Shown here piece by piece: positions 32,122-63,391 of a DNA stretch of 64,000 bases. The position numbers and the translations under genes were made by a program. The notes beneath the pieces were generated by a model that saw nothing but the letters and a program-made list of their open reading frames with translations, did no database searches and was not told the DNA's origin. The stretch's first letter is position 1. The number at the start of each line of letters is the position of its first letter. This DNA is from Phallusia mammillata (lineage: Eukaryota), in NCBI GenBank assembly GCA_965637545.1, contig OZ281501.1, positions 12,152,001 to 12,216,000 of the forward strand, given 5' to 3'.

Positions 32122-35100
32122 ATGGTGAGGGCGTCTGTTGCTTGTTTATAGTTAGCTCAGATGGTTTTATGTGTGTGTCACGCGGCTATACGTACAGGAA
32201 CCTAAGGGCAATAACCAGTGTTTTTATTGCCGAACAGGGAAATATTGTAGTAATTACACATCGTTTCGACGCAATGCAAAACGAAGGCGCTAGTTTGTTG
32301 TGACACTGGGGTACATTTTTGCAGGAATCATTTTGTCACGACTTCAAAGATTATTCGATGACTGGTGTGCCCCAATCGAATACCTACATTCCAGTGAAGG
32401 TATAGAATATTTTTTCAAATCGTTCAGCTGTTGGTTGTATCACAGGCTGTTCGGATTAAGGTTAATTTTCAGGCTGAAATAAATGGAAGTTATTCTGTAG
32501 AATGGATCTTGCGTATCTGAATGCGACATGGCAGAAAAGGAGCGTCAAATGCACACCCATTACTTTAAGCCAGTTCAGGTTGGTTTCGTATGAGATAAAA
32601 GAAACGCCTTGCTTGTCCGTTTGTAGAAAAATACCCGCTCACTATTCGTAAACTAATAATAACGCACGTAGGAAATGTTTTTTGTCGAAAATAGACTGTT
32701 AATACGTTTGTTGAAATATATAAGCTTTATTTAATGTTTTATTTACCAGCCTTTGGACTCTCCAGTGTACAGTGGCAGTCCAGCACCCCCATCATCAAGT
32801 TTGAACAGCTACCCACGTTATGGAACGGTTATTCCGAACAGAATTTTTGTGGGTGGTATTGACTTTAAGGTAGGTCCCATTAGTTAGTTCATATTTTCTA
32901 CATACTTTACATTCGAACATACATTTCTACACAGACGAAGGAAGAAGACTTGCAGCAATTCTTTTGCTCATTTGGCGTGGTACGAGATACCAAGATTATA
33001 AGGGACCGCGCAGATGTCTCCAAGGGGTAAATACATAGTTTCGGTTTAACGTGTTTCCTGAGCTTTTATAACCAACAAAATCTTTTATTCAATTAAGTGA
33101 GACATGTAATGTAATGTAAAATTGCCTAAAAATAACAGCAGTCATTTGCAGCAATTTTAAACCTTTTTTGTATTTTTGAGGTACGGCTTCGTGACGTTCG
33201 AAAGCGCAGACGAGGCTAATAAAGTCCGAGAAAAGGTAAGAGCACATTATCTTACACATTGCCTAAAATACTCACCATTTTTTTGTCTTTTGTACAGTAG
33301 CACGTGTAACTAGTATTTGCAAACTAAAAAACATTACTTTCGCTTTTAATTTGTAGGAAGATTGCTTGTACATGAACGGCAAAAAGCTAAATATTGGACA
33401 AGCCGTTCGCAAACAGCAAGTCTGTTTCCCGAAAGGTACGGCTGCTTATTATTTCAAAATGTTCTCAGCAAAAAGTCGTTCTAACGTCGTGGAGTAATTT
33501 CTTGGTTTACTTTATTGCAATCTGTGCTGGACATCACATAAATGTATTTTATAACAACGGACTTGCACATTGTGCTTTTTCAGATATACACGTACCTGGT
33601 CCACCAGGCAGTTGGGTTCTACATCCTGGCGGGTATGCTTCCTTTACCAACCAAAACGGAATAACTTACTTTGCACCAGCCGCCCCTGTTATGGCCCCAG
33701 TGCAACAGCACCAGGTTGGTTTACTGACACTTTATGAAATTACCCAGCAAAACGCAAACTAGACCCTCTACCATGTCCACAACCATAAATCCTTTTTTTG
33801 AAATCATCCTATGTTGTTTATAGAGTTTTGTATTGCTTGATTATTTTTTTCTGAATCGCTTTTTTTTTTTTCAGAAACATATTCATTACTATGACATCAC
33901 ATGTGTGACTTTCTTTCCATTTACGCGAAATAGGTTTTAACACAATTATTTGGACTGGGCATTACACTCACAAAAGTATGCCGGAAATAAATGTGCAAAC
34001 AGAACGTTAACCGGCGCTGAAAGTGGTGGTAACAAAGTGTATTCTTTTTCTTTTTAGCCCTTCACACACAGCCATATGATGGCGTACAACGGTTCAGCAT
34101 ACCAGCCCGTATCGAATCACTATGCAAGTTACGCTTACCAAACCCAACCTTACAACACTGTGCATCTACCGTGGAATCACGCACCGGTAAGGATATGTAG
34201 TTTAATACAATAAACCATCACGTAGTATTTTTTTGCACCACTAGTTCTGAATTGAAACCAAATGCACGATTTTTATCGAAACTGAATACTATATTAAGTA
34301 CAAACTATCTTTTTCTTTCAATTGTCAAATTGCCCTACAGTATTCAACGTTTTGCCACATTTCTCATTAGCCGTTTTTTCTCAAAGTGATCATATTAATT
34401 CGCAATACATTTGCTTTGTAAGCGCCTCTATGTTTTTAATATTACAAAAACACTGTAATTTTCATCAACCACAAAACTGTTTGTAGATCGCTGGTGCATG
34501 TGGTCAGATTATCGCTCCATCGCCAACTCACTCTGGGATGGAACAAGTTAACGTGGTTCCCATGGCAACTCCTGCGCTTTCCACTGGAGGATATTTGCTT
34601 CCCCGGTCAGCTGCCGTTGCTCAAACAGTCGCGGTAAATATGCCTCATTTACTCAAAACAAATTCGACTTAAACGCATATTTATGACGACACAGGAAGCA
34701 TAATTAATCCTAGTATATTCAGCAAGTATATTTAGATAGTATTCGCTGTGGACTATGGCATATTCAGATGTATCCTTTATATGTCGACAAAAGGCTTGAG
34801 GTCAGTAACGATCTTATAAAAAGCCTGTCGCTGGGTTTATGTTTATGGGAGATGTAGAAGAGAAATGAATTTTAGTCCTCGGGTGTTCCGCGTATAATGT
34901 AAATCTGAACTTGGTGAGGTTTACGCTTGCTGCAGCGTGTTTAACATTTACTTACTATCTATGCTCCTGTCTTTTTTCACCTAATAACATTACAACATTG
35001 CGCAGCATTTTCGGTGAATATTTCAGCCGACTGTGCGGCTATAGTTGCTTTCACTCAGCAAAATAAACTCAACTCATTTTATAGCCTCAGCCTGTCAGCA

Positions 35101-35661
35101 CACGCCCACCAGATGGCGGTATAAACCACCAGCAAGAAAAGCAATTTGTTCAACACCAAGAGGTAAAAATAGTTGGTATTTATACTCTTAGCAAGATTTC
35201 TTAACAATTATATTGCAGTCACAGCAGCAGCCTCCACAGACTCTGCGTATGATTGTACCACAAAATGTGACAACCACGTATGTACAACCAGCTCCAGTCC
35301 AAGCTCAAGTAATTAATTGCGTACAAATCGATGTTAATTATTATCATTTAATATGCATGTAATAATTTTTTTCTAGCCTCCTGTTGCGGTGTACGCTAAC
35401 CCACAGCCTCAGATGAAACCTGTTTCGACCGGACAGCCGCACTATGTTGGCGTGCATGACACTCAGCCACACTATGTCCCCATGATGGTAGCGGAGGGTG
35501 TGGAAGTAGCCCAAAACCACGTGCAAACTGTCGTCAAGGCCGAGAACGAAATTCTTACGCCACCGCTTACCCCAGAACAGCAGCAACTACCTATGATGCA
35601 TCAACAAGGGCAGCAGCACCAGCCTTTGCAGACGCAACACCCAGCACCCCAACAACAGTAA
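32122..35661 (+). CDS. BOLL: BOULE (DAZ family) germ-cell RNA-binding protein
   Basis: In-frame exons: 32122-32124 (ATG only), optional 32501-32578, 32750-32869 (PRYGTVIPNRIFVGGIDFK), ~32935-33026 (TKEEDLQQFF...KIIRDRADVSKG), 33181-33235 (YGFVTFES, RNP1), ~33357-33435 (KKLNIGQAVRKQQ), 33583-33714, 34058-34186, ~34488-34633, ~35083-35162, ~35219-35308 and ~35378-35661. The RRM matches the recalled BOULE sequence. Confidence 0.95.
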
Positions 35662-37101: not shown

Positions 37102-38003
37102 ATTTAAACAGTTTGATACTTTTTCTTAAGGGGATTCAAGGTGTTAAATCAACAACTAATATAACATTACCGTTGGTCTACTTAAGAGAGTATTTTAAGG
37201 CTTGGATATGTGTATGATTCTATTTTGTTTACACATGCTTCGTTTTTGGTAACTCCCTTTGGAAACACAAGGTGCAAGTCTACAAAATTTTCACATTTGC
37301 AAACAAGAGTGTACTGTCAAGAAACTCAAACATTGCGGTTTTCAGTAGATTATTTCCTTATTTTCTAGAAAAAAAATCAAAGCCACGTGGAACCACAATA
37401 TGTTTATGTCGTGGTCCGTGGACTGTTAACCTACCAATTAACAAACAGCCCGGATATATGCGTCATAAAGTGTTCATTTCGCCCCGTGAACTCGTACTTC
37501 GAACAGCATTGTCTGTGACGAAACAACGGCGCTCAGGGCCTAGTATGTGGCCCAACCAGACGTGTTGTCTTACGCCCTCAGGGCAGGCGTGTAAAAACTC
37601 GTTTGATTACTTCGATGCCCAGTAAATCGTCAGCTACAGAAAAGTGCGAGTTCTTTGCTATTCGTTCGACTGTTTAATTAAAACTGAGGTTTCAACAGGT
37701 TTAAACGTACAGCAAAGTTTTGTGCTTTATAGAACAAATGTAGGAATAAATGTTAAAGGCTTTTGAATAGCTTGAGGTAGTTTATACTCTTAAGCTACAA
37801 AAGGTACTAGAATCAGCTCAGCCTGAAACTTGCTTTGAAATACCCAAAATCATACCCAAGGTAGTAACAGCCTTTTTTGTTTTGAAAATAATAGCAAACT
37901 CGAGGTTTAATAACAACAGCACCGAGGAAAGTTGAAAATATCAATATTCTAGTGAGTTGGCTAAACCGTGGGCACGAAACTTTGTGCCATACTTCGTATT
38001 GGA

Positions 38004-41000
38004 ATGGATTTGCACGCCAATGTTGCCAATGTAAGTACTTTCTTGGCCTTTATAATAGTTTCAAAAAAGTCGGTTATTTTTTAAACATAAATTGCAAGCA
38101 GGATCTTGAACCTGAAGTAAAAGAACCAGAAAACGATGCAGAAGTCAAAGAAAACATCAATGATGGTGCGGACGCTCTATCTCAGCCTGATAACAATGCT
38201 GTAGAACAAGGTCATTGTTGCATTCATTTCTTATATATTACCATTATTCCGTAGCACATACTAATAAAGTTTTAGTATTTATCGACACCTCTAAAGTAAT
38301 AAGTACATTAATACATCAACAAAAAGGCTATAAAACAGTCATTAACAAGCAATGTGGGATATAATATGTATGTGTAAAATGTCATGTAAAACTCAGTTGT
38401 TGCAATGTTTTATGTTGGTTTGATCAGTCGCATTTTCACACAAACTGTGTGCCGTGTGATCTAAAATGAAGAAAATATCTCAAGTCGTTGTAGTGTATTT
38501 AAGCTATAAAGTAGTCCGACTATTGTTTGTAGTATGTAATCTAAAATTAAGCGAAGTTTATCTTAATTCCTGTGACGTAAATATAGATCAAGAGCAGGAT
38601 GACGAGAAAGAATCTGAAGTAGAAAGGGATGAAAGCGACCAAGGATCATCTTCTTCGGAATCTGACTCTAGCTCGTCTTCATCGGACTCAGAATCGGGTG
38701 CGGAGGACTTTGAAGAACCGGTTATGCCACAAGATAACGCAAGTCCCGAAGAAGGTGCCGGAAAAGAAGAAGAAATCCCGGCGAAAGAAGAATCACAACC
38801 TGATACAGATAGTGAAGAGCAGGAAAATGCAGATGAGAAACCCGAAGTAAATAATGTGGAACCACCACAGGATAGTGGCAAAGAAGATAACGATAGTGAT
38901 GTTTCTGATAACACACCACAAGAGCCAATAACGGAAGATGATAAGATGACACAAGAAAACCAACCCGAATCGGAAGAAAACAATGCCCCACCACCCCATG
39001 ATGATACGAATACGGAGGAACAAGATAATCTTAAGGAAGAGTCGCCTGAAAACAATTCGGTTCACGAAGACGAGCCTCCTCCAGAAGTCGACGCTTTACA
39101 TGGGAATAATTACGATTCGAGCTCCAGCAGTAGTTCATCAGATGATGAGGATGCAGGTCCTCTTGTTATCCGACAACAGCCGGAGAAGCCAGTACAAGAC
39201 GCCCCTGACGACGATTTAGCTGAGTGCCTTAAGCGCGCATTGGAGGAACGGGAGAAACAGCAACAGATGCAGAAACCTCCATGTAAGGTTTTATTAATGG
39301 GAACAAAAAGTCTACTGCAAAATTTTGAGTCAGTTCAAAATAAAAAAACATTATTTTTACGATAAAACAGCCGTATTAAATTACCTTACTATTCATTTGG
39401 GATACAGCAGTTGTGTCTTCAACGTTATTTAAAAACATGTTTATTCTGCCAATATCATAAAATCATGAGTTTTTGCAACCTTAAACCTTCGTATTCTGTC
39501 AAATTTTATTGTAATTACTTTTCTAAATGTAGGTTTAAATGTAGGTGTGTCCAATAATAAATTGCATATACCTGTTTGGCTTCTAGCTCCGGCCCCCATG
39601 AACAATTGTAGCTCGGATGAAGAAATCGATGATGCATCTCTTAAGGCAAGAACAGCCGATGACTTTGCAAACGACCACCCTCCCGCTCTTCCACCGAAGA
39701 TGCGAGTAAAATCAAACACCGGACCAAAGAACGAAGTCCCCAACATCTTCCACGTAAACGATAAGGTTGCGTTAAGCCTGTGACTTGTTAATCCAAATCA
39801 TTTTGGATCATAAAGGCCTCCTCAATAGGATCAGTATTTCAGATAAATTACGGTTCTCCTAAAATGCACAATTCGTGCGTTTTTTGCTTAGGCGTGTGCA
39901 AGAAGCATCACAACCGCAAAGTCCCAATGATTGTGCCGCTCAATGTTTCTGCAGGTCACATTGTTAAATGGTGATCAAATAGGCCAAAATTATCATAGAC
40001 TGGAGGTTTATGTCATCATGTTGTTTGCTATTTATTCTTACTAGATTTTCATTAATTAGCCTATCGAAAAGTACCAAATCTTTAAATGATAAAATGTACG
40101 AAATGTGCACAGTTTATGTTACGAGAATTGTAAACTGGTGTGTTTGACGTTTCTGGCCAAAAACTTGCTCTACCAAACCTAGACCTACCATACATTTTTG
40201 GAGGACATGTCTTCCTTTTACCAGCAACTAAACACGCTCAAACGTTTTTGTTGTTGTTGTTTGATTATAACTGTTAGACATTTTAATACGGTTAAAATAC
40301 ACTACCAGGTTAAAATACATCAGTGTAAAGATTTGTGATAATTGGTATTGGAACTAACTGAAAGCAAACTTCGTTTAAAATTGAAGATTTTAACTAATTT
40401 CGTAAAATTTATCAGTATTTTTGGTAAAATATTAGCACAATAATATCTGGTATATATATATATATATAAGTGTATACACTTGACCCTTTGGCGGTATCTT
40501 ATTACCAGTTTTTGCTATTAAAGCTGTAAAGTAAAATATTTACCATTTTAAATACTAACAGACCGCAAGTCTTGGAAGAGGACGATGGTCGGATGATGAA
40601 CTTTCACCTCCACCTCAAGCTTACAAACAACAACGCAAAGAACCAAGTCGCTCCCAACCTGATAGAATTATCGATTTCTCGCAACCTGTAAGAACTTGTC
40701 AAATGTAGTGAAGGATTCAGTACATTTTATTCTTTTTCTAGCAGCGTTTTAAAATAAATTTATTTAATGGATAGAACTAAATTTCGTTTTTCAAAAGAGG
40801 TTACTTTTGACACAAAATTTTATTATCTTTACTGCATTAACAGCAACCAAAGAACAGTCCAAAACGCCACAGACCAAAACACCATCACCAACAATACGAT
40901 CCACCCAACAGGATTATCAAGGTCCCGAGGTGAGATATCATGTTGTTTGCATTTTGCAGGCAAAACCACTTCGACGCACGCGTACAAACAAAATTGACAC

Positions 41001-44000
41001 GATAATTCCTGACAACTCATTGCCACGTACAGATATAGCCTGTAGGTATAACTGCCAGGCTACAAATGTCAGTGAAGTTTTTATGATCTGATAGCACATC
41101 CAGTTACGAGTGGTTGGTACAACGAAGTATAATTACTTGTAATTGTAGGTTTAACGACGAATTAGCGTCTACTGATTTTTGACCTCACATATGACGTAAT
41201 TCGCGATGTTACCTCTGCGTTGTCACCTACGTTTAATTGGTTAAATGGTAAACTACGATTTTAAGGACGGTTTAATAAAGTATTCGTTTTTTGAATAGTT
41301 TATAATCTAAGTTAAAGGTTTGAGGCATGGATTAATGTTGGTTGAGGCATTTTTTCGGCTGCCATAATACATATTTTAAGTTTGTTAGCATTATATGCTA
41401 GTAAATTGATTCTGGGAATCATTCCCTATTCTGTTACATTCGTGTAACGATTGTCACATTTCATATACTATTATTCACAAGTTTGTTAGTATGATGTTGA
41501 TTGCTTCCAATTGTTTCTGTTCTAAATTAAAGGCTAAAATACGTCCTATCGGCAACCTAAAACAAATCTGTAGATTTATAAGTGATATAAAAAGTTTAAC
41601 GCGAGTATATTTTGTGATATTCACCAGAAACGCCAACGAAGACATCAATGACGTGTACCGACGTCAGGCGATGGTTAGTTTACATTCAAACGTCCCAAAT
41701 CAGCGAAATGGTGACGGTTCGGATCATTACGACAGCGTACATGAGGATAACGACGATCTCAACAGACTGATCAAAGAGGCCAATAGGTACAATAACAAAA
41801 TTTCCTAGTGTATTGTTTTATGTAATATAGGCTGTTGTGGAATACTAAGTACGGATCTTTTCATAAGTTTTATGATGAAAATAGCAGCCCAAATAGACGT
41901 AAAAAGCGACATGCTTTGTTTTTCAATTGTTTCGGCAAATGCTCGTGCCATCAATAATGATATGAAGGGTCACATCAGTTACACCAGTTTGTATAACTAT
42001 AAACAAAGCGTTGAAAAATAAAGCATGTCGATTTTTATGAGCATTTGGGTCGTTATTTTCATCATACGGCCTTTTTTATTTGCCTAAACAAGTTTTAAAT
42101 GTGTACTGAAAAAAAGTTGTTCGTAAAGCTTTAATGCAACTCTTCTCATAGACTGGACATGGATCGGGTCGCAGAGAGAAAAGTCGACCCAATAGATGTG
42201 GTTTATCCATCGTACAACAAAAGTTTACCACGTCAGAAAAATCTTACTTCAGCGTATCCCGAGGTTTTCGCCAAACTCGCTGTCACTGACGATCAAGTGG
42301 TAGGAGCATAATTTGTTTACAAAATATATTTCCAGTTGTCGCAGTTTTTAGGTTATAAATGATTTTTTACTGTTGTTTTAGGTTCCAGTTATTCCTGTGG
42401 TAGAACCCGTTCAATTCAGGTTGGTATAATTTATCGATTTTTTTAGTGGCATTGTGTTTCAGTTTTTACCAAGCCTGTGTTTTTGTGAATTATTTCAAAA
42501 TATACCCTAAAAGAACGTTTGCTAATATAAAACATTTCATTATTTTAACTATTAAAGATATATTTTCGTAATACTTTATTACGACGCTTTGACAAAACTT
42601 TTATAATCAGTGTACAACAGCTAAAACAAATTCCATTCTAAAAAAAGTTTCTGTAAGTGATCCATTGAATCTAATTGAGTAAATGTGGTCGGATTATAAT
42701 CCTTGTTTGTGGTTTTAAATGGACGCACAATTTTGAATGTCTTTTGCATTTTAGTGCGATCCCTCAGGGTCCAGATTTGCCACCGAAAACTACTCGTAAT
42801 TCGCAACGAAAGCGAAAATCGTTGATCAACGATGATCCCCTTCCTACAACTCGAGATCCGCTGGATGGCGATGATGAGATATCGATTGGCGAGTCAGATA
42901 TTAAGTAAGATTCCACAGCAACTGTACTTGAAAGTGGTTGTTGCCATGCAAAAACTATATACTTCCCACATTTCCTCCCAATTCATCTATTTCAGTAATT
43001 CCCAACGTTTTTACTACCACCATATAATTGGGTGGTTTGGTACAGTGTTGGTGTACATATTACATCCAATAATCTTCAAAATATGTACAACTGAAAGTGC
43101 AAGAAAGTTCAAACATTTGCTCAAACAGCTTTCCTTTTATGCCAAAACTCCAAGTCTAATGTAATCCTATATCACTTGGAGCCTGGAGGTACGCGTACTG
43201 CAGTTTGGGAACCACATATTCATATGCACAGATTGTTTTATACCTGTTGTTTTCTAAGATTATTTCACTAAGTCTAAAAGTCGCGTTTGAACAACTTTAA
43301 GGCAGCAAAACTAAAATGTTTTTGGAATTTTTAGATTCCCAACACTACCATCAGACATACCGAAATCACTGGATGCAAGTCAGTATCTGAGTGAAGTCTA
43401 TCCTTCAGATTACACCGACTTCGATTCAGAAACTGATGGCACAGAAATTCAGGTACAGACAAAATACAAGTTATTTGTGTAGCAAATCACTATGCTTGGT
43501 TTAGCCTAGGAGCATGTTTTTTAAATCAGCAATTTGTATTCAAGATTGAAAAAATATTGCCTACGATTAAACTTTTCTTACAATTTCCTATTTAAAGAAC
43601 CATCTTCATCAAGATATCACACCGTACGACACCGTGGCTGACTTAGAGACTGATTTCGATATGCCTAAACCCAAAGCAGGTAAGCGACTGCAGAAGCTAT
43701 TTAATTTGGTGATAAGTGTTGAATGTACAAAATTAACGAAGGAAAATTGGTAACGGTAGTTTTTGTTTCAGACGACGAATCTAACGCGATAGTAAATGAC
43801 GATTACCAGATTTGCACTGCACTCAGCAAATCCCACAACACCTTCCCACGCAGACTGAAACCTGATAAACCAGTTCCAAAGTACGTTTGACATGTAACAT
43901 GGCGTTTCTGTCACATTTTTGCTCGATTTCGAACCCATTGCAGTTTGTATCTAAAAACAATGTACCAACTTACATAATATATTTTGTTTCAAACATGATT

Positions 44001-47000
44001 TTTGACAACGACATAATAATATATTTCAAATGTATTTTAGATGTTGGCATTGTTTTTTGATAAATAACCTGAAGACGAATTTTAGTGTGGATCAAGCTTA
44101 TGATTTTTATGTGTATGTTGTTAAACATGATTTTCAATTTTTACCCTTGATACCAACGATTAACATTTCTGCTGCAAATAGCATTATTAAATTTAAATAT
44201 GATATCAAACAGAGAGAGAGCAAGTTTGACAGCAATGGCGATTCCACTTACCGATCCCTCTACCGGTCCCAAGCGGCGAATGGCTTCGCTACCCTATCAT
44301 GGAGAAGGAAACCTCAAAAGAAATAAAAGTGTTCCAGATTTTGATGCCAACACCGCGGCACCGGTGAATTTTTTCGGCCACGTGCCACACATCGTGGTCA
44401 CTAGGGGTCCTACTGGTTCCGATGGGGATTTCCCAACCCCGAGGAATCTCTCACGCGAGGACGAGCCATTCAACAAAAAATCGAAGAACGAATCACAATC
44501 TGAAAATGATGTAAGTTGAATAGTGACAAAGCTGTGTGTTGAGTAGTAGTAAGATGTATCGTACGATCCCAAGTTCCGTGCAAGACATCCGGTGTCCTTG
44601 ACCTTGACCTTGAAGACGCGTCGCAATTCCGAAGGAAGTCTTACCTTTGGGGGCAGGTGTTGTGATGCATATTTACAATTGCCAAACGATACTTACATAC
44701 TTAAACTTTTCATCTAGATGGCCGAGTGGCCTGCGCAGCCGCCTTGTGTTTACGAGGTTGTTGGTTCTAATCCTGTTACGGCAATTTGTGTTTTATTGAA
44801 CAATACACTTTATTGGTCCAACCCAGTGGAAATCGATGGGTTGAACTAAATTAAAGTCACCAAATGCCTAAGTTGAAAAAATCAAATAAACATGGTTCGA
44901 AGGACTTAAAAAAATGGCGATGGCAAACTAATTGCTACCATAACGCGGTCATGCGTTGTCTGCGCAACGATTGTAAAAATAAAACAAATAAACAATCGGC
45001 AAATCATATCATTAGAGTTTTTTTACGAAGCTAAGTTTTAAATGCTTTATATTACCTGTTTCATCCACTTCATTTTAGGCCCCGCAACTGCATTTTTCTG
45101 TTGGCCACACAACCAACTCTGACACGGACGCTACAGTGGTTGGAAATCCCAATAACCTGCAGATTAATGTTCTTCCATCCGATGACCCGAACGTCATTAA
45201 CCTAAACATTACTACCGCCTCGAGAGTGCCATCTTCCGACGATGCAAAGAGCCCAGTTTTGTTTGATGATCCTCCGGCGTTTTCACCATTGCAGGTAACA
45301 AACGAATTCAACGAATTTAGAAGCAAACATTTAGGCAAAAACTACCTAATAAATGTCGATTTTTGGCGTGTGTAGTTATATTTCTTTTGCTATACTCGGG
45401 GTTGCCATACCGTACTTATTTCTAAGATTTGTCCTTATTTTGAAGGGTTATGTCTTAGAAACGTTTATTGTCCTTATTTCTAAGAAATGTCCTTCTTTTT
45501 GACTTGCGTCCTTATTTTTGCTTATTTTCAACAATTACAAGGAACAAACTTAGTGAAATGACAGTCAAATCCCTGTCATAAGTAAAAGTAAACCAAGACC
45601 TGAGTCATGAGATGCACGAAGTATTCTTTATAAACAAGGAGTTGCTGGAACAGATTGTTTCTGGTCCAAATATTGCATATGATATGTCATGGCTCGTATA
45701 TGTGCAAATATTTGTTCAAAAACGTTTGTTTCGTTTCGTAGGAAAAGTTAATTTTTCGGTTGTCCTTATTTTGGGTTTCATGTCGATGGCAACCCTGGCT
45801 ATACTTAAAGTAAACGACCGGAAAACCGAAGACATAAGTAGACTATCACTTCACTGTGGATTGGCAAAGACGTCGCAAACTTTTATCCAATTTAAGGACA
45901 TATGACACGGATTTGAACACGAGCTTAAACAAGACCTGCTATTTTCCAATAATTTTGTATTCTTTAATGTTCACCATTGTAATTTGACAAGTATTAATGT
46001 GCTATACATAAAAATGACTAGCTTGCGTATAAGTGACTTAGTGTTCAGTTCACTACAACGTGTTATCGCTATTCAGGTTCAACCGATTGTGCCGATGACA
46101 GCGATAGCTCACCCCCCTTCTGCCACTTATGAAGCCGACATGGCTTCACTCACCAGCCCCCAACATCGGGTTGTTGAAATGCCATCTATACTTGTCGATA
46201 CAAGCGATTTGCCACCACCACCCGCACCTGAAGGTAGAGATAATGCATTGCTTTTTGTAGGTAGTTTTTTACTGTTGATTTATTTGAGATGAAGTTTCTT
46301 AAGTTATTTGAAACAAAACATTCGATGGAATCTGGTTTTTACTATTTGTGGAAAATATTCGATAAAACAACTTTTTCGACAATGGCTTTTAGGTTACAGA
46401 CATACTTCATGTTTCAAACGCATATTAAGTCGTACTGTTGCCTATGATTGACAATTCCAGCATTTAAAACATAAACAACTAAAATATTAACGTAAAATAT
46501 ATCTTTCTACAAAACAAGAACCAGAAATTTTACCTACACCGCTGGTCCCAGAAGTGATTATTGCACCACCAGCACCTGTGGTTCAACAGCAACCAATCGT
46601 ACACCATCCCATAGAACCATTAGTGATACCAGTACAAGCCAGTGCACCACCAATCACCACTACACGATCAATGGTGGTTCAAACTGCTCCAGAAATTCAG
46701 CAGCAACCTAACAACACAGTGGTGGAAATACCACAACCTTATGGTGGTCGCTATAGGTAAAAATTGTGCCAAGCAAAATTAGATGTTTTTTGCGTTCCGG
46801 CTAAGTTTTTTTTAAACTATAATGGCACTTAACATAATCTTAAAGAGCAATACGTAAATAAAGACATCCATTTGCATGCACTGATGATGACAACAGCGAT
46901 TGTTAAAAAGCCTGCAAAAGACATATTAAAGTCTGCAAAAAATCGACCTAAGCTCCTACATGCAGTTTTGTTTTGTGGATTAAGCCATTTATAAACGTGT

Positions 47001-50000
47001 TAATTTCTTACCTTTATTTTGTGAGTGTTGACTGATAGTTATTGTACCAGAGTTACCCTAACATGTTACGAGTTTAGTATGTCCTCATAAACGGCTTGCG
47101 ATTAAACGGCCTACATAATTTTTACTATGCTTTTACAGATCATTACCAGCTGACCAAAAAGCATTACGTCACGGAGGTGACAGTGGCATTGACCTTACCC
47201 ACTATGACGCACAACAGCGAGCACAAGAGGACGAGTATGTGTTTTATTTCAGTTTGATTGTTTTTTTTTGTTTCTGTTGCACAAAGAACAACTTGTTCTT
47301 GTTTTTAGCGATTCTGATTCGTCCAGTGATTCAGAGTATGACATGAAAAGCACCAACTCCAAACGAAAACTAAAAAATGCGGGTACGAAAGTAAACAATT
47401 TAAAGTTATTGTTTTACGCGAATGCTAATGCGCCCCTTCATATCACTGATGATGGCTTGAGCATTTGCCGAAACGTTTGAATAAAATAGCATGTCTTTTT
47501 TTACGTCTATTTGGGCCGTTTGATTCGCCATTAAACTTATGTACACACCCATGTAAGTGTTCAGTGAATGTTACATGTAATAAAAGTAATTGATAAATGG
47601 GCGGAAAGCTTAAACTAAACATTGCGAGGTGATGCTGGTTAATGTAATTATATTTTACACCAAATCATGTTAATACACGTATATTTCAGATGAACTCAAT
47701 CGTGGTGGTCTATCGGACAAGTATATTGAATGGTACAAGAGTCAATACATGAAGCCCACCTGTTGCTACTTGTTCACCAAGCATCTTATGTTTGTTCTAA
47801 ACTTGATCTTTCTGATTGTAAGTGACAGCCTGTCGAAAGTGTACTCGAAACACATTACTGTTGTTGTTTTTCACTCGTATCTGAATTCGCTTCATTTTAA
47901 GCTGAATGCAAACATTTCACAAAGACGTTTATGTCAGCAATATGCAGATAACAAACAAAACACAGTAAACTTCGGTTAATCCGATCCCGTTTGGACCAGA
48001 AAAAATGTCCGGATTAGGTGAAGATCCGGATTAATCGTTGTCGCTTAGTTAAAGCCGTACCACATTACAAATCATTGGTACAAGTTTTGTCCCAATTGGG
48101 CGAAGACGATTAACCGAATCCGGTTTAACCTAGGTTTACTGTACAGAAAGCAAAAAATGTCTAATCCTATATTGTTAAAAGCATTTCATTTTCTGTAAAT
48201 CCTCTTCCTTTAATCTAACGGCAAAATACTTAAAATGTTAGATTTTTGCAGTGACAAGTCAACAATAAAATTTACAATATCTCCAGATTGGTCTTGCTCT
48301 TATTGGATTGGGTCTATGGGGTATTATTGACATGATGGCCAGTGGAGTGATGGACGTGTGGCTTGTTGTATACGATCCACTCTTTCCAGTATTTGCACTT
48401 GGTGTTGTCATCACCCTCGTATGTTTCTTCGGTGCTGCCGGCTTCCTACGCGACAACATTTGTCTTCTAAAGTAAGAAAAAAAATTGGTTGTAAATACGA
48501 TATTCAAAACTACGGCTACAGCATGGTATTGAATCATGTATTTTCTGATTCTTTGTGTCAATTTGTGTTGAATTAAGCAACAAATTTAAGTATTATATTT
48601 CCAACAGGTGTTTTGGGAGTTTTTTGGTCATACTTTGTTTTTGTTTTGTTGGCGGAGGAATTTGCTTTTGGATTATGAAAACTACAATTCAAGTATTCGT
48701 AAGTAGTAGTTAATTTCAATTATTCGAGAAAGAATATAGAGTTAAGACACAAATTCTTAAAGTAGATTCGTCGAATCGGGCTTTCTGGGTCGGTTTCGGT
48801 CACCTATTTCGGGTGCTCACTACTCTGATTTAGCACCACACTATGTCTACAGTCTACAAACAGAAGTACGATAATCTTTTTTTGATTTAGACCACCAACT
48901 CCTTTGTAAACCTGGTGCAAGAATACAACTACACGACTAGGAAAGCTGCCTCATTCACAATGGATCAAATTCAAGGAACATTCGAATGCTGCGGATTTTC
49001 AGCCTATTCGGATTGGAACACAACAGCGTATGATAATTGGTGGATGTTAAAGTATGTTTTTCACACTTATTAAATTGTGTCCTTGTGTTCAGCGAGTACA
49101 GATGTTACGAGGACCAAACGTGCAACTTGCCACCGACCTGCTGCAAATTACAAGACACAACGGTTCGTTTATGTTCGGTCACAGTGTACCCAGCACAGTA
49201 TACCCTGTATACACGAGACCAGTGGTTCCCAACCAGGGGGAAATTCCCCACTAGGGGGAAATTTTGTAATTTGTAGGGGAGAATTTGGGTCACAATATTT
49301 ATCTCTTACTGGTTGTCTGTGCCATGTGTTGTTGCTGCATTTGCCATATATGAGCTGAGAAAAATTTGTAGAGGGAATTAGGTTTGAATATCGACTAAAA
49401 TGGTGCAGAGGACAAAAAAGGTTGGGAACCACTGCATTAGATTTATAAATAATACTTTTTTATCTTTGTGTTTGAACTTTGTGTTGCTATAGTTTTGTTC
49501 TATCGACACTTACATAATAATGTTCCACATCTTATTCAGCAAGCCGTTTTCATACAACACTGGGGCGAAAATGTTTTTTTCTAGAGCAAAGTAACATCGG
49601 TTTAACGTGGCTGGCTCTTACAAATCAGTAGCTATTTAAATCCTTGTGGAACAAACCTATACCACAAAAATAACACTTGGAAGCAAATATTGATAAGTTT
49701 ACTTGGTTTTAAATGTTCTGCAAAAATTATTGAAATTAACATTTTGTTTTTTGGATCTACAGGTGCCGTGCACAACTATTGCAGGTGAAAAAACTTTTTT
49801 CCATATAATTCGAATCTTATTCTTAACAAACAGTAGTCGAAATATTTCCCAATGCAAAAAATGCATAGGTGATGACTAAGGCGATTAATTTTTGATCTAA
49901 AAAAAGAAAAATTTTGACCTACAAATTAAAAATTTTGACAAATTTTTGACTTTTTTGACAAGTCAAAAAATAATCGCCCTAATGATGACCGATACTAAAA

Positions 50001-50731
50001 GTACCGCTTGTTATTGTGTTTGCTGCGAATAGTTTGTTTGCCAGTCAATGTTTATCGTCTCGATGCTAATAGAAATGTAATGTGATGTGCATTATAGGAA
50101 GTATTATCAACTACTGTTGTTTTAACTCAGGTTCACGCCATCGGCACGGATGCATTGATGCAATGTCATTGTGGGCGAGAAACCGTACTCCGCTTCTAGT
50201 CGGAGTTTGGTTAGGAATCATAGTTCTATTTTTTATCAATTTTGGATGCATCTACGCAATGGTAAGATGATGCAAATGCATGATTGATATGTCTTGCAAT
50301 GTTACCTTTTTTAAGCTTTTGAAACCACAAAAACGCCTTTAGGCAGTATCTTTGTCACAATCAATCATAAATAGCAAATAGCAAGTTTCGTTTTGCAAAC
50401 TGTGACATTAATAGCAGCCTTTATTTAAATTTAAACGTTCGATAAGGCATATGCAATTCAGTCTGGTAAAAACTTAATGAATAGCAACCAAAACACATAG
50501 GTTACCCGTAGATGTATGACTGACAAGACAGTGTTATTTGTAAAGCGCAATTTTTTTCGAAATGTTCCTAAAAATCGTTTGTACTTTTCATTTTAGGCCA
50601 AGGAAATAAAATATTTGAAATTGGTTCGCGACAAAATCTTCTCCATTGGTGAAACTTATTCGGACGGAGAAAGTCGGGTGATTTTCAACGGCAACGTTCG
50701 TCCAGAATTTGAACTTCCCTCGCAATACTGA
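38004..50731 (+). CDS. TspanC8-type tetraspanin with a ~1060-aa disordered N-terminal extension (27-exon model, ~1334 aa)
   Basis: Phase-compatible GT-AG exons: 38004-38030, 38102-38210, 38587-39282, 39587-39765, 40562-40687, 40844-40929, 41628-41786, 42152-42299, 42382-42419, 42755-42904, 43335-43452, 43598-43679, 43772-43880, 44213-44510, 45079-45294, 46077-46233, 46519-46756, 47139-47234, 47309-47382, 47690-47817, 48287-48471, 48608-48698, 48891-49027, 49093-49162, 49763-49784, 50131-50261, 50597-50731 (4005 nt). The tetraspanin part is confident: four hydrophobic segments, GFLRDNICLLK, CCG..DW, PPTCC, GC and 8 EC2 cysteines. Fusion to the upstream exons is a prediction. Confidence 0.75.
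44712..44990 (+). mobile_element. tRNA-derived SINE (boundaries approximate)
   Basis: Pol III A box TGGCCGAGTGG (44719-44729) and B box GGTTCTAATCC (44763-44773), followed by a core (...AATACACTT...TCCAACCCAGTGG...ATGGGTTG) resembling my recollection of the Ciona Cics-1 SINE. Confidence 0.7.
45397..45797. mobile_element. hAT (Blackjack-like) MITE
   Basis: TIR C(G/A)GGGTTGCCA / TGGCAACCCTG, internal GTCCTTATTT repeats, perfect 8-bp TSD GCTATACT. Confidence 0.9.
47963..48141. mobile_element. Tc1/pogo-like MITE
   Basis: Ends CAGTAAAC / GTTTACTG with right TA flank (left flank CA) and palindromic CCGGATTA/TAATCCG subterminal motifs. Confidence 0.6.
49220..49434. mobile_element. hAT-Charlie-like MITE
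   Basis: Perfect TIR CAGTGGTTCCCAACC / GGTTGGGAACCACTG; TSD degenerate (CACGAGAC / CATTAGAT). Confidence 0.8.
49877..49981. mobile_element. Tiny (105 bp) hAT-type MITE
   Basis: TIR TA(A/G)GGCGATTA.TTTTTGA; TSD GTGATGAC / ATGATGAC. Confidence 0.7.
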
Positions 50732-53700
50732 TCATTGAGATATTTGCAGCAAAACAAACTGAAATACAATTGTATGTTTTTGCAATGATCTATTTAATTA
50801 GTTTTCGCATATGTACCGCTGCCAGAAATACACCCTTCTTATTTCTGATGGGTAGGTGAAATTCCTACACTTTTGACGCAAGTCAGTGGTTGTTCTCGTT
50901 TCAACGCATTTATCTGTACTACTGAAACATTTACGCAAAAATACATGTAAAAAGATGCTCGAAATTTGTGTCTCATTGATATCCGTGATAAATGGACCAG
51001 GTATTCATAAGTACAAAACAAAACAGTCTTAAGACGTTCGGCTGAAAAAAGGGAAATATTTTGCACCCCTCATGGCGCACAGTAGAAGATATTTGTTTGT
51101 TTTTTGAGGAAATAAATACATGAAATATGTATAAGGCTACTTTCATTGGTCGAAGTCATGCTAAAGACAACCATATCCAACATCCACTTGCGGCGCCAAC
51201 GAGTATGGTTTGCGCCTCACTGTTAAAGCGGAAAGAGAAAAAAAACGTTTTTTTCAGATAAGATACCGAAATTCGCAAGTGCAGCAATAATAACAATTAC
51301 CACCGTTCTTCGTGAGTGTAATCACTTGTATGATGTTATAACCGACCCCTTGTGACGTAAGAACCGCAGAACGTCATTTTGTGTTGACTTTTTTACTTCG
51401 AACTGTCAAAATCAATTACGCCCCGCTGGTGAATAATAAGATTAAAATTTTCCCCAAGTGTTGTGAGGGTGTCACGTGGCGGGCACTTGTCGTCATGCAG
51501 CAGGAACACAGGGGACACTTGACAAGATGATTGCGGCACTGATGACTAACCGCAAAAGCTAAGTACTGGAAAATTCCCGTGTTGTCTAGAGGTGAAGCCT
51601 AACTGTAACTTTACCAAACAACATAAAAAAATGGTACACTGAGGTTTCATTGCGCTTTGACAGATTACTGGATATATTTCAACTTGTATGACAAATATTT
51701 CATTAAATCTTGACACAAACTAGACCGACCCTAGGATTGGGAGATTTTTTTCCCAAAACAGGAAAATACTGACTTGTTATCCGGAAGAAATCAGTCAACT
51801 AACCATGTTTCTCTGGTCGCAAACACGACAACCGTCACAATCAAACTTGTTTCAATTGATGCCTTTGTGCTTTCCCAATTTCCAATCAATCAGTCAACGG
51901 AAAATGGCGATCGACCATCGTTGGCGCCTTGAGGACAACTTTTTTCCATTATGGCTCGAGCACTTTAAGCGTATAAATAGAAATTAAATCAAAGTCAATG
52001 ATTAAAATCACAATTTGAAACGAGGTGGGCATTTGACGAAGCGACAAGGAGCACTCTGAGGGGACTTCGACCTTTTGATGCCCGGAAATCAGTGGTTGCG
52101 ATTTTCCAAGTTGACAAGTGAGAATGTCAGTTGGCAGCCAGTGGTCGGTCCGACCTCACAAGGCGCTGTGTTGTCGTAGGGCTTTCATTTCGTGCCAAAG
52201 CTGCTTCAGCATTTCATCGCCTTACCGCGGCGGCCCCTTCATTGTACAGTGCATGGGGACGAATTGTAATTGAGTGCCGCGAACGAAAACAAGCCCATTC
52301 CCGACTTAATAGCGACAAAGGCCTTTTCCATCACGCCGCGTCAAGCGATTGTGACAAATAGAGCCGTGCGTTGAAAGGCCGTCACCTCGAATTGACCCGG
52401 GTCAACTCGTCCATAAACGACGTCTGTCAGTGTCGTTATTCAACCGTAACGCAATTGACGTCATGTTTTGACGAGGGCTTCCAGCTTGCCGTCGATTTAC
52501 GACTTTGGAGAAATTGCAAACAATTGTTTATTGCCCGTGCGACCCCGAAGAGGCGACTTGGAGCCAAATTGGCGGGTGCTCAGAAATAAATCATGCATCC
52601 CTGATTGTTGACTTCCTCATAGCATTGTGAGCCAATAGCGGTTAAAAGTCAATCACCCTACAAGGTCACAGTTGGAGTATTATTTATTACTGAGTATGTC
52701 CATTTATTGTTGGCAAATCATTGCTGGAAATGTGCCATAAAACATAAGGTGGATGACAATTTAGGTTAGAAGCAATCTCAAGGTGCGTTCGATGAACTTC
52801 AGCGCTGGTCGCATGTTTTCTTGGTAACCAGCATTTTGTAAACATTTAACAAATCCGACTTACATTGAAGTACATTATCCAAGTATCAGGTTTTTGTACA
52901 AACAATCGATGCGCTAATTCAAGCTTTTTCTCCAGACTATAAACTACTTGAAGTTTCAAAATGCTGACTTGTGATGTCCCAGCAAACTTGCCGAAATGAA
53001 AGGCCGATTTACATCTTGAAACTCTCACTTCGATGCTTTGCCCAAACATAAGTGGCAATGAATGATATTTCCTTAAGTTGCGGAAAAGAGGCAACTGTGT
53101 TGATTACTCAAGTTTCCGAAGTATTTTTGAAACTCGCTAATTGGTGGTAAGGCATTGGATGTCAGAGGTTTGCTTACAACAACAAGACATGGGCTTGGCG
53201 GTGTCATTTGCTTGTCAACACTTAACGAGCTGGAAGGGAATGGGAGGAGGGATGCGTTTCGAACGTCTGTGAAAATATTGTGACATCGGAGTGAGATAAA
53301 TTGTTCGCTGTTTCGGCGTTGGCACCCACAGGCCCCGAACGAAAACCGCTGCAAAAACAACTTGGTTTCGGCGTTCCACGGGACCCGACCAGGCCCAGGC
53401 ATTGTGTATCCCGACAACAAAGTGGTTTGAAAACAGGAAGACCAATCTTCGTCGAAATTCCTTTAGGATCTGTGTGTTTGTGGCAACCCTGGAGCGGTCA
53501 TTTACATTCCGACTTTACAAGATTACTGCCCACCCCACCAGAAAAGTTGACCCTTAATCAGCGCTTGGTCCTTTTGAAGGTCCGAACCCTGAGCTAATCT
53601 CATTCGTGCGCATTAAGTGCAAGCTTGTGAAACACTGCCGGGCATGTCCAGTTAAGTGAGCTCGCGTAACGGATCACTTCAATGGCTCGGATTTGTGTTG

Positions 53701-54451
53701 CCTGGTGATGAAAAATAATGAAGATTTAAGGACACAAGGCTGACACTAAGTCTCCGTACCTTTTGGGTGATGCATGCACTGCCTCGCAAGATCAAGAATA
53801 AGTGCTCGGATGAGGTTTGCTTGGCCGCACACCGATCCCTGACTGTGATGCGGCTTTGCGGTGTGTCTGTTTGACCAATTGGATTATTTCCAATGGGCCC
53901 CTGTTGCACAAGGTCGCTCAGTCTTGGTCAGCGGTGACATTATCTTTCGTCGGCCCGTGAGGAGCGGATTAAACCCATTCACCCATGAAGAGCTTTTAGT
54001 CATTGTTTAGGATTGTAAATATACTGCACTTTTTTGCGACTTCTTCAAAAACGGTTAAACAGTTTAAAGGGTGTATTTCCTATATATTTCCACCATTCTG
54101 CATAGGATCAACTAGCAGGTTTGATTGATTTCGCTCTTCTTTTTCCGGTATGGCTTTGTACCAAAAGTAGGTTGGAATTGGAAACATAAGCGCACACTTA
54201 TCCAGGCAGAAATTAACATCATCAACAAATTACTCATCTGATATTATCAAATATATGCCAAAGTCAGGTACGAATTTAAACCATTTGCAACAATTAAAGA
54301 AACAGTAATTGTGAAAGATTGACACCTGAGGTGATCGGGTTTGATAAAGCGGGGCACTTAACACTTTGGAGCATGGGAAACTACTAAACCTGAGAGCCTG
54401 TCTCACGTTGCACGCGTCCAAAGTAATAAAAACAAATCCCCACCGGACGCG

Positions 54452-54530
54452 GGGTCACTTTCAAGGGTCACGTAAGGTCAAAAACAGTTGTGACCCGTAT
54501 TTTGGTCGGTCGCTGACCTCGGGTGAGTCA
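54452..54530. promoter_or_regulatory. Cluster of nuclear-receptor half-sites plus an AP-1 site
   Basis: GGGTCA (54452, 54465), AGGTCA (54475; DR4 with the preceding site), TGACCC (54491), TGACCT (54514), then TGAGTCA. Confidence 0.4.
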
Positions 54531-62862: not shown

Positions 62863-62879
62863 TGACCTACAACTGACCC
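62863..62879 (-). promoter_or_regulatory. Perfect DR5 element (candidate retinoic acid response element)
   Basis: TGACCT-ACAAC-TGACCC reads GGGTCA-N5-AGGTCA on the minus strand; an extra TGACCT lies at 62895-62900. Confidence 0.45.
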
Positions 62880-63322
62880 GGGCCGTCCCGGCACTGACCT
62901 GCCAATTCATCGGCGTTCGCTTGCAAGACAGGGACCCGGGGCGGGTTGGCGTCGGGCGCACAGGGTCGTAAATTACCAAACGCCGCGGCGTCGAGATTGC
63001 GGCGTTCGGGAATCATGTATACAAAGCCCAAACAGCCGCATTCATCACACTAAAACGTGGCTATTTTGAGTGGCCGCGGAAGTGGCAGGGCTTATCAATA
63101 GAGGGAATTGCGGAAACGAGCTTGACGTCGTTGCTATAAGGTCGATGACTTCCAACAGCTCGCCGCCATCGCACCCCCTTAGCACCAAAAGGCGCGCGCC
63201 GCAAAATACAGAGGCACCGTGGCAATAAATTTTGTTTTTATCGATGCGGTCAAACGTGTTCGTTGTATGTAAAAGACATGACCGATCGCAAACTCCACCC
63301 ACTAGTGTACAGCGAACAAAAA

Positions 63323-63391
63323 AGCGCGAGCGAAGTTAAAGAGGAAAATTAGAAAAAACAGCGCGAGCGAAGTTAAAGAGGAAAATTAGAA
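63323..63391. repeat. Perfect 32-bp direct repeat, 37-bp period
   Basis: AGCGCGAGCGAAGTTAAAGAGGAAAATTAGAA at 63323 and 63360. Confidence 0.92.

What the first reader, a model, noticed from the sequence alone, without database searches (positions are those of the whole stretch)
38004..50731. Giant tetraspanin: a ~1060-aa disordered cytoplasmic N-terminus spliced in frame to a TspanC8 domain
Seen: 19 consecutive exons (3106 nt), none recognisable as a known domain, are all phase-compatible and stop-free. They splice in frame into the exon carrying TM1 (...KNA|DELNRGGLSDKYIEWYKSQYMKPTCCYLFTKHLMFVLNLIFLI). No signal peptide or hydrophobic segment is apparent in the extension. Established: tetraspanins are usually 200-350 aa with very short cytoplasmic tails, and TspanC8 members (8 EC2 cysteines) escort ADAM10 and tune Notch signalling. 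Inference: a ~1334-aa tetraspanin that carries its own large cytoplasmic scaffold, possibly a lineage-specific gene fusion coupling ADAM10 trafficking to cytoskeletal or tyrosine-kinase signalling. This is the best candidate for an undescribed system in the window.
Basis: partly seen in the sequence, partly recalled or inferred. Interest (0 to 1): 0.9.

Follow-up and report, generated by a model that had tools for sequence, protein, structure and literature searches.

The report
Giant ascidian tetraspanin with disordered tail
The sea squirt Phallusia mammillata makes one spliced mRNA for a 1334-residue tetraspanin whose roughly 1050-residue acidic, disordered N-terminal tail is conserved and gene-linked in other ascidians; the protein is in databases only as "uncharacterized", and what the tail does is untested.

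Summary
The window encodes a deposited 1334-aa protein (Phallusia mammillata CAB3262171.1, "uncharacterized protein LOC100178305") at 100% identity through 27 GT-AG exons, 38004-50731.

RNA contigs from four runs in two studies carry the contested splice 47382|47690 and all 12 junctions from 45079 to the stop.

The C-terminal 278 aa form a full tetraspanin domain (PF00335, 113.9 bits) with the eight-cysteine TspanC8 pattern. The best solved relative is TSPAN15. The only vertebrate hits of the TM1-TM2 exon are TSPAN10.

The tail has no Pfam domain and no hydrophobic segment. Its net charge is about -108 and it is predicted disordered. It is homologous and linked to the tetraspanin in Clavelina (E 4e-149), Styela (E 6e-47, 1730-1742 aa) and an unnamed tunicate contig. 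The Met before TM1 is Leu in every orthologue, so this is one conserved gene, not a read-through.

Motifs conserved in all three long orthologues are two YxxΦ, an acidic di-leucine, PxxPxK and DSGIDLT. They suggest a sorting or regulatory tail. ADAM10 binding is untested.

No tail relatives were found outside ascidians, and no paper describes the protein. Verdict: new variant of a known kind.

The parts
38004..38030 (+). Exon 1, start codon (MDLHANVAN).
   Evidence: exact match to P0001. An in-frame stop lies 13 codons upstream in the genome. The Clavelina orthologue also starts with MD.
38102..38210 (+). Exon 2, acidic tail.
38587..39282 (+). Exon 3 (696 nt), an acidic, Ser-rich, low-complexity block that ends in the conserved GPLVIRQQ and LKRALEEREK islands.
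39587..39765 (+). Exon 4, with the conserved ARTA..DF and PALPPK (PxxPxK) motifs.
40562..40687 (+). Exon 5, with the conserved RGRWSDDE and DRIIDFSQ islands.
40844..40929 (+). Exon 6, a basic and His-rich variable stretch.
41628..41786 (+). Exon 7, with VSLHS and the acidic di-leucine-type motif DDLNRLI. AlphaFold2 predicts a short helix here.
42152..42299 (+). Exon 8, conserved YPSY..SLP..KNL..YP.VFAKLA island.
42382..42419 (+). Exon 9 (38 nt).
42755..42904 (+). Exon 10, with AIPQGP and the invariant DGDDEIS.
43335..43452 (+). Exon 11, invariant YPSDYT (a YTDF YxxΦ motif).
43598..43679 (+). Exon 12, invariant YDTVA (a YDTV YxxΦ motif) followed by an acidic ETD.D stretch.
43772..43880 (+). Exon 13, conserved DDYQIC..TFP.RL.PDKP island.
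44213..44510 (+). Exon 14, with the AIPL and VPHIVVTRGPT islands.
   Evidence: Its 3' end is read in the loose ends of the RNA contigs at 45079.
45079..45294 (+). Exon 15, with INVLPSDDPNVINLNI.
   Evidence: (RNA junctions).
46077..46233 (+). Exon 16, with QHRVV, Pro-rich.
46519..46756 (+). Exon 17, a Pro/Val/Gln-rich stretch.
47139..47234 (+). Exon 18, invariant GDSGIDLT (a beta-TrCP-degron-like DSG motif).
   Evidence: The same exon is seen in tunicate contig L001.
47309..47382 (+). Exon 19, the last tail exon (SEYD..KRKLK). It has no stop before its donor.
   Evidence: The same exon is seen in L001.
47383..47689 (+). Intron 19, the contested intron. If retained it would give a stop at 47478-47480 and an AATAAA at 47480. 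Positions 47425-47541 are a dispersed repeat, with an inverted copy at 41862-41978.
   Evidence: spliced out in all 4 runs. The extra depth at 47435-47520 comes from contigs with foreign flanks; the repeat and the signals.
47690..47817 (+). Exon 20, with the conserved juxtamembrane KY.EWYK..Y(M/L)KP(T/S)CC and the first part of TM1.
   Evidence: the Met is Leu in every orthologue.
48287..48471 (+). Exon 21, covering the end of TM1, the small loop and TM2.
   Evidence: Pfam PF00335 profile positions 15-76.
48608..48698 (+). Exon 22, TM3.
48891..49027 (+). Exon 23, the large loop with the CCG motif.
49093..49162 (+). Exon 24, the large loop with its C, C and PPTCC cysteines.
49763..49784 (+). 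Exon 25, a 22-nt micro-exon carrying the seventh loop cysteine.
   Evidence: (both flanking joints in all 4 runs).
50131..50261 (+). Exon 26, with the GC cysteine and TM4.
50597..50731 (+). Exon 27, the C-terminal cytoplasmic tail of 44 aa and the stop codon. The 3' UTR runs on past 50900.

Best explanation
This is one conserved ascidian gene, not two. It encodes a 148-kDa four-pass membrane protein. The last 278 residues are a tetraspanin of the eight-cysteine (TspanC8) type. The first roughly 1056 residues are a cytosolic, very acidic (pI 4.4), Pro/Ser/Asp/Glu-rich, intrinsically disordered tail.

The tail is a string of short conserved islands separated by fast-evolving low-complexity spacers. 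That is the usual layout of a linear-motif scaffold.

Inferred mechanism:
- The tetraspanin module sits in the membrane and, like other TspanC8 proteins, probably escorts a partner. The default guess is the ADAM10/Kuzbanian orthologue.
- The tail supplies adaptor-binding and turnover signals: two YxxΦ motifs, an acidic di-leucine, a PxxPxK, a DSG degron-like motif, and many acidic Ser clusters that could be phosphorylated.
- These would set where the complex goes and how long it lives.
- The nearest functional parallels are the 24-residue di-leucine N-terminus of C. elegans TSP-14B, and the phospho-regulated N-terminal tail of iRhom2 for ADAM17.

Shown: gene structure, splicing, domain identity, cysteine pattern, tail conservation and linkage.

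Inferred: cytosolic disorder, motif function, and the ADAM10 partnership.
For: Gene model and RNA:
- The window reproduces P0001 at 100% through 27 GT-AG exons.
- All junctions from exon 15 to exon 27, including 47382|47690, are in one contig per run in 4 runs of 2 studies.
- The upstream exons account for the 31-mer share in the same runs.

Domain:
- PF00335 scores 113.9 bits over residues 1066-1289.
- The 8-Cys pattern CCG-DW-C-C-PxxCC-C-GC is the pattern that PMC2965184 gives for TSPAN5/10/15/33.
- The best PDB hit is TSPAN15, 8esv_B, at 7.5e-18.
- The only vertebrate representatives hit by the TM1-TM2 exon among 1.84 billion are three TSPAN10-like clusters, two of them named Tetraspanin-10.

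One gene, conserved:
- Clavelina has a 1139-aa protein and Styela has 1730-1742-aa proteins with the same order, carrying only PF00335.
- Tail-only BLASTP gives 3.9e-149 against Clavelina and 5.6e-47 against Styela.
- The Styela genome is collinear with the Phallusia protein.
- An unannotated tunicate contig has the same last three exons in order.
- The Met before KPTCC is Leu in five other sequences, while the 20 residues before it are conserved.

Tail nature:
- No Pfam hit and no hydrophobic window.
- Net charge -108, with 0.1% Trp and 0.3% Cys.
- AlphaFold2 pLDDT is about 30 throughout the tail.

Motifs conserved at aligned positions in all three long orthologues are listed.

Precedents:
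- TSP-14B N-terminal di-leucine sorting signal (PMC8827444).
- Tspan15 cytoplasmic regions control surface stability (PMC8268256).
- iRhom2 tail phosphorylation (PMC5656746).
Against: - No functional data exist.
- ADAM10 binding is untested. The ascidian large-loop core is 48-56 residues against 68 in fish TSPAN10, with deletions relative to TSPAN15 in the variable part of the loop, so partner specificity may differ.
- Identity to fish TSPAN10 is only 23-26%, and no tree with all six TspanC8 paralogues could be built.
- The motif matches are short regular expressions. Conservation shows constraint, not which partner binds.
- The AlphaFold2 alignment had 3 sequences and also scored the tetraspanin part poorly, so low pLDDT is weak evidence of disorder.
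- Contigs drop rare isoforms, so minor tail-only or tetraspanin-only transcripts are not excluded.
- The deposited protein and the RNA runs may share raw data, so they are not fully independent.
Confidence: 0.7

Rival explanations
1. The fusion protein is real, but the tetraspanin module no longer works with ADAM10, or never did. The tail would then serve an ascidian-specific role unrelated to sheddase trafficking, such as anchoring a membrane microdomain to a cytosolic structure or forming a membrane-tethered condensate.
For: - The large loop is shortened and has gaps against TSPAN15 in the loop region.
- Identity to vertebrate TspanC8 proteins is low.
- The tail is huge, highly charged and low in complexity.
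- The tail has no relatives outside ascidians.
Against: - The eight-cysteine pattern is intact in Phallusia, Styela and Ciona savignyi.
- According to PMC2965184, all metazoan 8-Cys tetraspanins belong to one super-lineage.
- All six mammalian members bind ADAM10 (PMC8268256).
Confidence: 0.25
2. The locus has two outputs. Intron 19 would act as a switch: retention or intronic polyadenylation would give a tail-only soluble protein, and the internal ATG at 47749 would give a normal short tetraspanin. The fused form would then be only one of several products.
For: - A stop at 47478-47480 and an AATAAA at 47480 lie in intron 19.
- An in-frame ATG lies four codons before the CC of TM1.
- Earlier scan note s1-358983 raises the same idea.
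- Clavelina has an annotated isoform X3 that ends after TM2, so some isoform diversity exists.
Against: - All four RNA runs splice the intron cleanly. The only intronic depth, at 47435-47520, comes from contigs with unrelated flanks that belong to a dispersed repeat.
- Depth over 47561-47689 is nil once the exon share is taken out.
- The Met is Leu in Clavelina, Styela, both Ciona species and contig L001.
- All Styela isoforms are 1730-1742 aa long.
Confidence: 0.05
3. The transcript is a non-functional read-through or conjoined product of two neighbouring genes, or an assembly chimera.
For: In Ciona intestinalis an NCBI model of 223 aa called 'tetraspanin-17-like' begins at an internal Met. 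Annotators have therefore, at least once, modelled the tetraspanin on its own.
Against: - The junction is a canonical GT..AG splice at full contig depth in two studies.
- The frame is open over 4005 nt.
- The arrangement and the tail sequence are conserved in three ascidian orders.
- The tail exon has no stop of its own, and the tetraspanin exon has no conserved start.
Confidence: 0.02

Closest known systems
TspanC8 tetraspanins (TSPAN5, 10, 14, 15, 17, 33; Drosophila Tsp3A/26A/86D; C. elegans TSP-12/14)
   Same: - Four transmembrane helices and a full-length PF00335 match.
- Eight loop cysteines in the pattern CCG-DW-C-C-PxxCC-C-GC.
- Juxtamembrane cysteines before TM1.
- The best solved relative is TSPAN15, taken from the ADAM10-Tspan15 complex entry 8esv.
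   Different: - The N-terminal cytoplasmic region is about 1056 aa, and about 1370 aa in Styela. Typical tetraspanins are 200-350 aa in total with very short cytoplasmic tails.
- The large-loop core is 12-20 residues shorter.
- Identity to fish TSPAN10 is 23-26%.
- ADAM10 binding has not been tested.
Vertebrate TSPAN10 (oculospanin)
   Same: - It is the only vertebrate family reached by the TM1-TM2 exon in the exhaustive search.
- Some fish and sturgeon TSPAN10-like models carry N-terminal extensions of about 85-130 residues before TM1.
- PMC2965184 reports TSPAN10-lineage orthologues in invertebrate deuterostomes.
   Different: - No sequence similarity was found between the ascidian tail and fish or sturgeon TSPAN10 N-termini.
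- Orthology was not tested with a tree.
C. elegans TSP-14B (N-terminal isoform extension)
   Same: It is a TspanC8 whose extra N-terminal residues carry a di-leucine sorting signal that sets membrane localisation (PMC8827444). The ascidian tail has a conserved acidic di-leucine-type motif and two YxxΦ motifs.
   Different: - The extension is 24 residues against about 1050.
- There is no sequence relationship.
- The function of the ascidian motifs is untested.
iRhom2 N-terminal cytoplasmic tail (regulator of ADAM17)
   Same: It is a polytopic escort protein of an ADAM sheddase that carries a long cytoplasmic N-terminal tail, which is phosphorylated and recruits 14-3-3 proteins to control shedding (PMC5656746). 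This is the closest 'works like' analogy.
   Different: - It has a different fold (a rhomboid pseudoprotease) and a different protease partner.
- There is no homology.
- No 14-3-3 motif is conserved in all three ascidian tails.

Membership tests
Tetraspanin superfamily (PF00335) | Full-length match to the family profile above the curated cut-off. | tested here: met
   113.9 bits against a cut-off of 32.1, residues 1066-1289 on profile positions 2-223 of 225. Styela scores 114.8 bits and C. savignyi 111.3 bits.
Tetraspanin superfamily (PF00335) | Four hydrophobic helices and a CCG motif in the large loop. | tested here: met
   hydrophobic windows at about 1060-1090, 1102-1130, 1136-1160 and 1268-1290. 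CCG at residue 1203.
TspanC8 (8-cysteine super-lineage) | Eight cysteines in the large loop in the pattern CCG--[DN][WY]--C--C--PXXCC--C--GC (PMC2965184, Table 1). | tested here: met
   Phallusia and C. savignyi match fully. Styela has 8 Cys but QW in place of [DN][WY] and PC in place of GC.
TspanC8 (8-cysteine super-lineage) | Phylogenetic placement inside the TspanC8 clade. | tested here: inconclusive
   No tree was possible, because only TSPAN10 reference sequences could be fetched. Indirect evidence: the best PDB hit is TSPAN15, the vertebrate hits are TSPAN10-like only, and NCBI names the Ciona fragment 'tetraspanin-17-like'. Foldseek puts TSPAN15 first but mixes in CD63 and TSPAN6, on a low-confidence model.
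TspanC8 (8-cysteine super-lineage) | [quoted passage not shown] | not testable with these tools
   Needs co-immunoprecipitation or trafficking assays.
TSPAN10 orthologue | N-terminal extension homologous to that of vertebrate TSPAN10. | tested here: not met
   BLASTP of the tail against three fish or sturgeon TSPAN10 N-termini finds nothing better than E 6.7.
Conjoined or read-through transcript of two genes | Each half has its own start and stop, and the joint form is not conserved. | tested here: not met
   The tail's last exon has no stop. The start Met of the tetraspanin half is not conserved. The joint form is conserved in three orders.

The most novel reading that the evidence does not exclude
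Ascidians may have turned a TspanC8 into a self-contained regulatory hub for a sheddase, the ADAM10 counterpart of iRhom2. In this reading the membrane-tethered disordered tail of more than 1000 residues integrates phosphorylation, adaptor binding (AP complexes, SH3 proteins) and ubiquitin-ligase recruitment. Together these would switch the location, partner release or lifetime of the protease complex. That would be a class of tetraspanin with a built-in cytoplasmic signalling scaffold, which has not been described for any tetraspanin.
Probability: 0.25. Interest if true: 0.75.

Novelty: new variant of a known kind. Interest (0 to 1): 0.55.

Why it matters
Tetraspanins are regarded as small proteins (200-350 aa) whose cytoplasmic parts are a few dozen residues at most. 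Even those short stretches decide where TspanC8/ADAM10 complexes go and how long they last.

A family conserved across ascidians has a cytoplasmic N-terminus about 50 times longer, built from conserved linear motifs. That makes it a natural experiment on what tetraspanin tails can do.

It sits in the closest invertebrate relatives of vertebrates. Phallusia and Ciona embryos are transparent and easy to inject and image.

It also corrects annotation. The Ciona models are fragments, and the long proteins are labelled only "uncharacterized" although they are TspanC8-type tetraspanins.

Tried and rejected
- **Gene modelling from sequence alone.** A splice-site and codon dynamic-programming script over-split the upstream region into 29 micro-exons. 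I dropped it once the database protein gave the exact model.
- **Homologue search with the domain alone.** P0001:1055-1334 at E 1e-5 found nothing among 941 word-sharing candidates. The word filter is too coarse at about 40% identity, and I had set the threshold too strictly. As a result the named TSPAN5/14/15/17/33 sequences needed for a tree could not be fetched.
- **Searches for tail relatives.** Two long-protein searches and a language-model look-alike search (best score 0.65, below chance level) found no tail relative outside the three ascidians.
- **Structure.** The tetraspanin domain modelled from 9 sequences gave pLDDT 58, with the large loop under 50. The Swiss-Prot fold search therefore only confirms "tetraspanin". 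The atlas search of the domain was likewise not subfamily-specific.
- **Clavelina locus.** Not retrievable by exact look-up.
- **Contig L002.** It starts inside the gene, so it says nothing about the tail.
- **Literature.** Searches for the accessions, for ascidian, Ciona or Phallusia with tetraspanin, and for long disordered tetraspanin tails found no description.
- **Spurious hits.** The bacterial hits P0007 and P0013 to the TM exon (7 stretches each) were set aside as hydrophobic-repeat noise.
Full report
**What is in the sequence**

The window is from the ascidian Phallusia mammillata. This follows from the exact match described below.

I started with RNA. Logan contigs of four RNA runs from two studies were laid on 45000-50900. 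In every run a single contig carries twelve GT..AG joints. Joining the exons at those joints gives one open frame from 45079 to a stop at 50731.

An exhaustive phmmer search was run with the largest tetraspanin exon (48287-48469) against 1.84 billion representatives. It returned a 1334-aa protein at 100% identity, with the exon at residues 1079-1139. That protein is CAB3262171.1 / A0A6F9DG41, "uncharacterized protein LOC100178305 [Phallusia mammillata]".

A spliced-alignment script then showed that the window encodes it residue for residue through 27 exons, all with GT-AG introns, from the ATG at 38004. Exons 1-19 total 3106 nt.

Three indirect checks support them:
- The contigs extend 2298-2394 nt upstream of 45079, against 2325 nt needed.
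- Their loose ends at 45079 read the end of exon 14.
- The same RNA runs hold 0.28-0.30 of the 31-mers of 37900-44600. My calculation from the exon lengths expects 0.29 if all fourteen exons, and only those, are transcribed.

**The tetraspanin half**

Residues 1066-1289 match Pfam PF00335 end to end at 113.9 bits, and nothing else in the protein matches any Pfam family.

The large loop has eight cysteines arranged CCG-DW-C-C-PPTCC-C-GC. Huang et al. give this pattern for the TSPAN5/10/15/33 super-lineage and state that all metazoan 8-Cys tetraspanins belong to it (PMC2965184).

On subfamily:
- Among solved structures the best match is TSPAN15 from the ADAM10 complex entry 8esv (7.5e-18), ahead of TSPAN7, CD53 and CD81.
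- In the exhaustive search the only vertebrate clusters reached were three TSPAN10-like ones, two of them named Tetraspanin-10.
- Identity to fish TSPAN10 is only 23-26%.
- The loop core is 48-56 residues in ascidians against 68 in fish TSPAN10.

I could not fetch the other TspanC8 paralogues, so no tree was built. The protein meets the sequence definition of a TspanC8. Its exact position in that clade, and ADAM10 binding, remain open.

**The tail half**

Residues 1-1056 weigh 117 kDa and have pI 4.4.
- Over residues 1-1040, net charge is -108 and the composition is 11.7% Pro, 11.2% Asp, 9.5% Ser, 8.5% Glu, 0.1% Trp and 0.3% Cys.
- No 19-residue window reaches transmembrane hydrophobicity.
- AlphaFold2 gives pLDDT of about 30 throughout, with only two short helices and one hairpin, all at low confidence. 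That is weak evidence, because only three sequences were available.

As in all tetraspanins the N-terminus should be cytosolic. This is established topology and was not tested here.

**One gene or two?**

Long proteins with the same order, and with PF00335 as their only Pfam domain, exist in:
- Clavelina lepadiformis (1139 aa, isoform X3);
- Styela clava (four isoforms of 1730-1742 aa).

These three species represent the three traditional ascidian orders.

Tail-only BLASTP gives E 3.9e-149 against Clavelina and 5.6e-47 against Styela. Per-window identity in the tail (20-60%) is close to that of the membrane domain.

Further evidence of linkage:
- The Styela genome locus is collinear with the Phallusia protein from tail to TM4.
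- An unannotated contig from another tunicate (L001) carries, in order and on one strand, the GDSGIDL exon, the SEYD..KRKLK exon and the EWY..KPSCC/TM1 exon.
- The 20 residues before the putative internal start are conserved (KY.EWYK..Y.KP.CC). The Met itself is Leu in Clavelina, Styela, both Ciona species and L001.
- The last tail exon has no stop.

This is therefore a single ancient gene, not a read-through. The short Ciona entries are truncated models. They are a 223-aa "tetraspanin-17-like" that starts at the Met of the conserved YMEWY, and a 435-aa C. savignyi fragment.

**The proposed switch in intron 19**

The stop at 47478 and the AATAAA at 47480 are real. However, all four runs splice the intron. 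The only extra depth there, at 47435-47520, comes from contigs with foreign flanks. It coincides with a dispersed repeat whose inverted copy lies in intron 7 at 41862-41978. Contigs can hide rare isoforms, so a minor product is not excluded. Nothing supports one.

**How it may work**

The tail alternates invariant islands with variable spacers. The invariant islands include DGDDEIS, YPSDYT, YDTVA, INVLPS..INLNI, QHRVV and GDSGIDLT.

Motif classes conserved at aligned positions in all three long proteins are:
- two YxxΦ motifs (YTDF and YDTV);
- an acidic di-leucine type (DDLNRLI);
- a PxxPxK (PALPPK);
- a DSG motif resembling a beta-TrCP degron.

14-3-3, NPxY, PPxY and clathrin-box patterns are not conserved.

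Three published precedents are relevant:
- Cytoplasmic regions of TspanC8 proteins control surface stability (PMC8268256).
- A di-leucine in the 24-residue N-terminal extension of C. elegans TSP-14B directs basolateral targeting (PMC8827444).
- iRhom2 uses a phosphorylated N-terminal tail to regulate ADAM17 (PMC5656746).

The most economical reading is that the tail is a sorting, turnover and regulatory scaffold for a TspanC8 complex. I put the architecture at about 0.95 and this mechanism at about 0.35.

**Origin and novelty**

No tail relative was found outside ascidians. The two word-filtered searches could only see candidates of roughly 600-2300 aa, and the language-model search found nothing either. 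The tail shows no similarity to vertebrate TSPAN10 N-termini. "Gene fusion" therefore remains a guess. Stepwise growth of an N-terminal extension is equally possible.

The sequences are public but labelled "uncharacterized", and five literature searches found no description. I class it as a new variant of a known kind: a TspanC8-type tetraspanin with an unprecedentedly long, conserved, motif-rich cytoplasmic tail.

Noticed in passing
window 47425-47541 and 41862-41978: A dispersed repeat of about 117 nt sits in inverted orientation in introns 19 and 7, at 80% identity. RNA contigs with unrelated flanks cover it, so other copies are transcribed elsewhere in the genome.
   Followed up: partly
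window 47478-47480, 47480, 47530, 47579, 47749: If intron 19 were retained it would give a stop 32 codons in, followed by three poly(A)-signal hexamers. An in-frame ATG lies just before TM1. There is no RNA support for use of either, and the ATG is Leu in the orthologues.
   Followed up: yes
window 49326-50157 and 45394-45787: Low-depth RNA contigs (about 4-40, against 150-450 for the exons) cover intronic sequence. They are probably pre-mRNA or repeats. One odd GA..GA joint, 49873->49989, appears in a single run.
   Followed up: no
P0010 (Ciona intestinalis) and P0008 (Ciona savignyi): The public Ciona models of this gene are fragments. The 223-aa 'tetraspanin-17-like' starts at an internal Met and lacks part of the large loop. 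The 435-aa C. savignyi model keeps only the last roughly 130 tail residues. Both also show a long Ser-rich and basic C-terminal tail that Phallusia lacks.
   Followed up: partly
P0003 (Clavelina isoform X3): This isoform leaves the tetraspanin frame after TM2 and ends 31 residues later. It would be a two-helix product that keeps the whole tail.
   Followed up: no
window 33394-35661 (+): Gln- and Pro-rich open stretches upstream of the gene may belong to another gene lying between the RIF1 gene (placed upstream by earlier scan note s1-358982) and this one.
   Followed up: no
window 52000-64000: G+C rises to 0.44-0.50, against 0.33-0.40 over the tetraspanin gene. No long open frames are found there.
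   Followed up: no
L003 (Styela clava OZ123522.1): The Styela orthologue is flanked by a MARVEL-domain gene upstream and a C2-domain gene downstream. Synteny with the Phallusia window was not compared.
   Followed up: no
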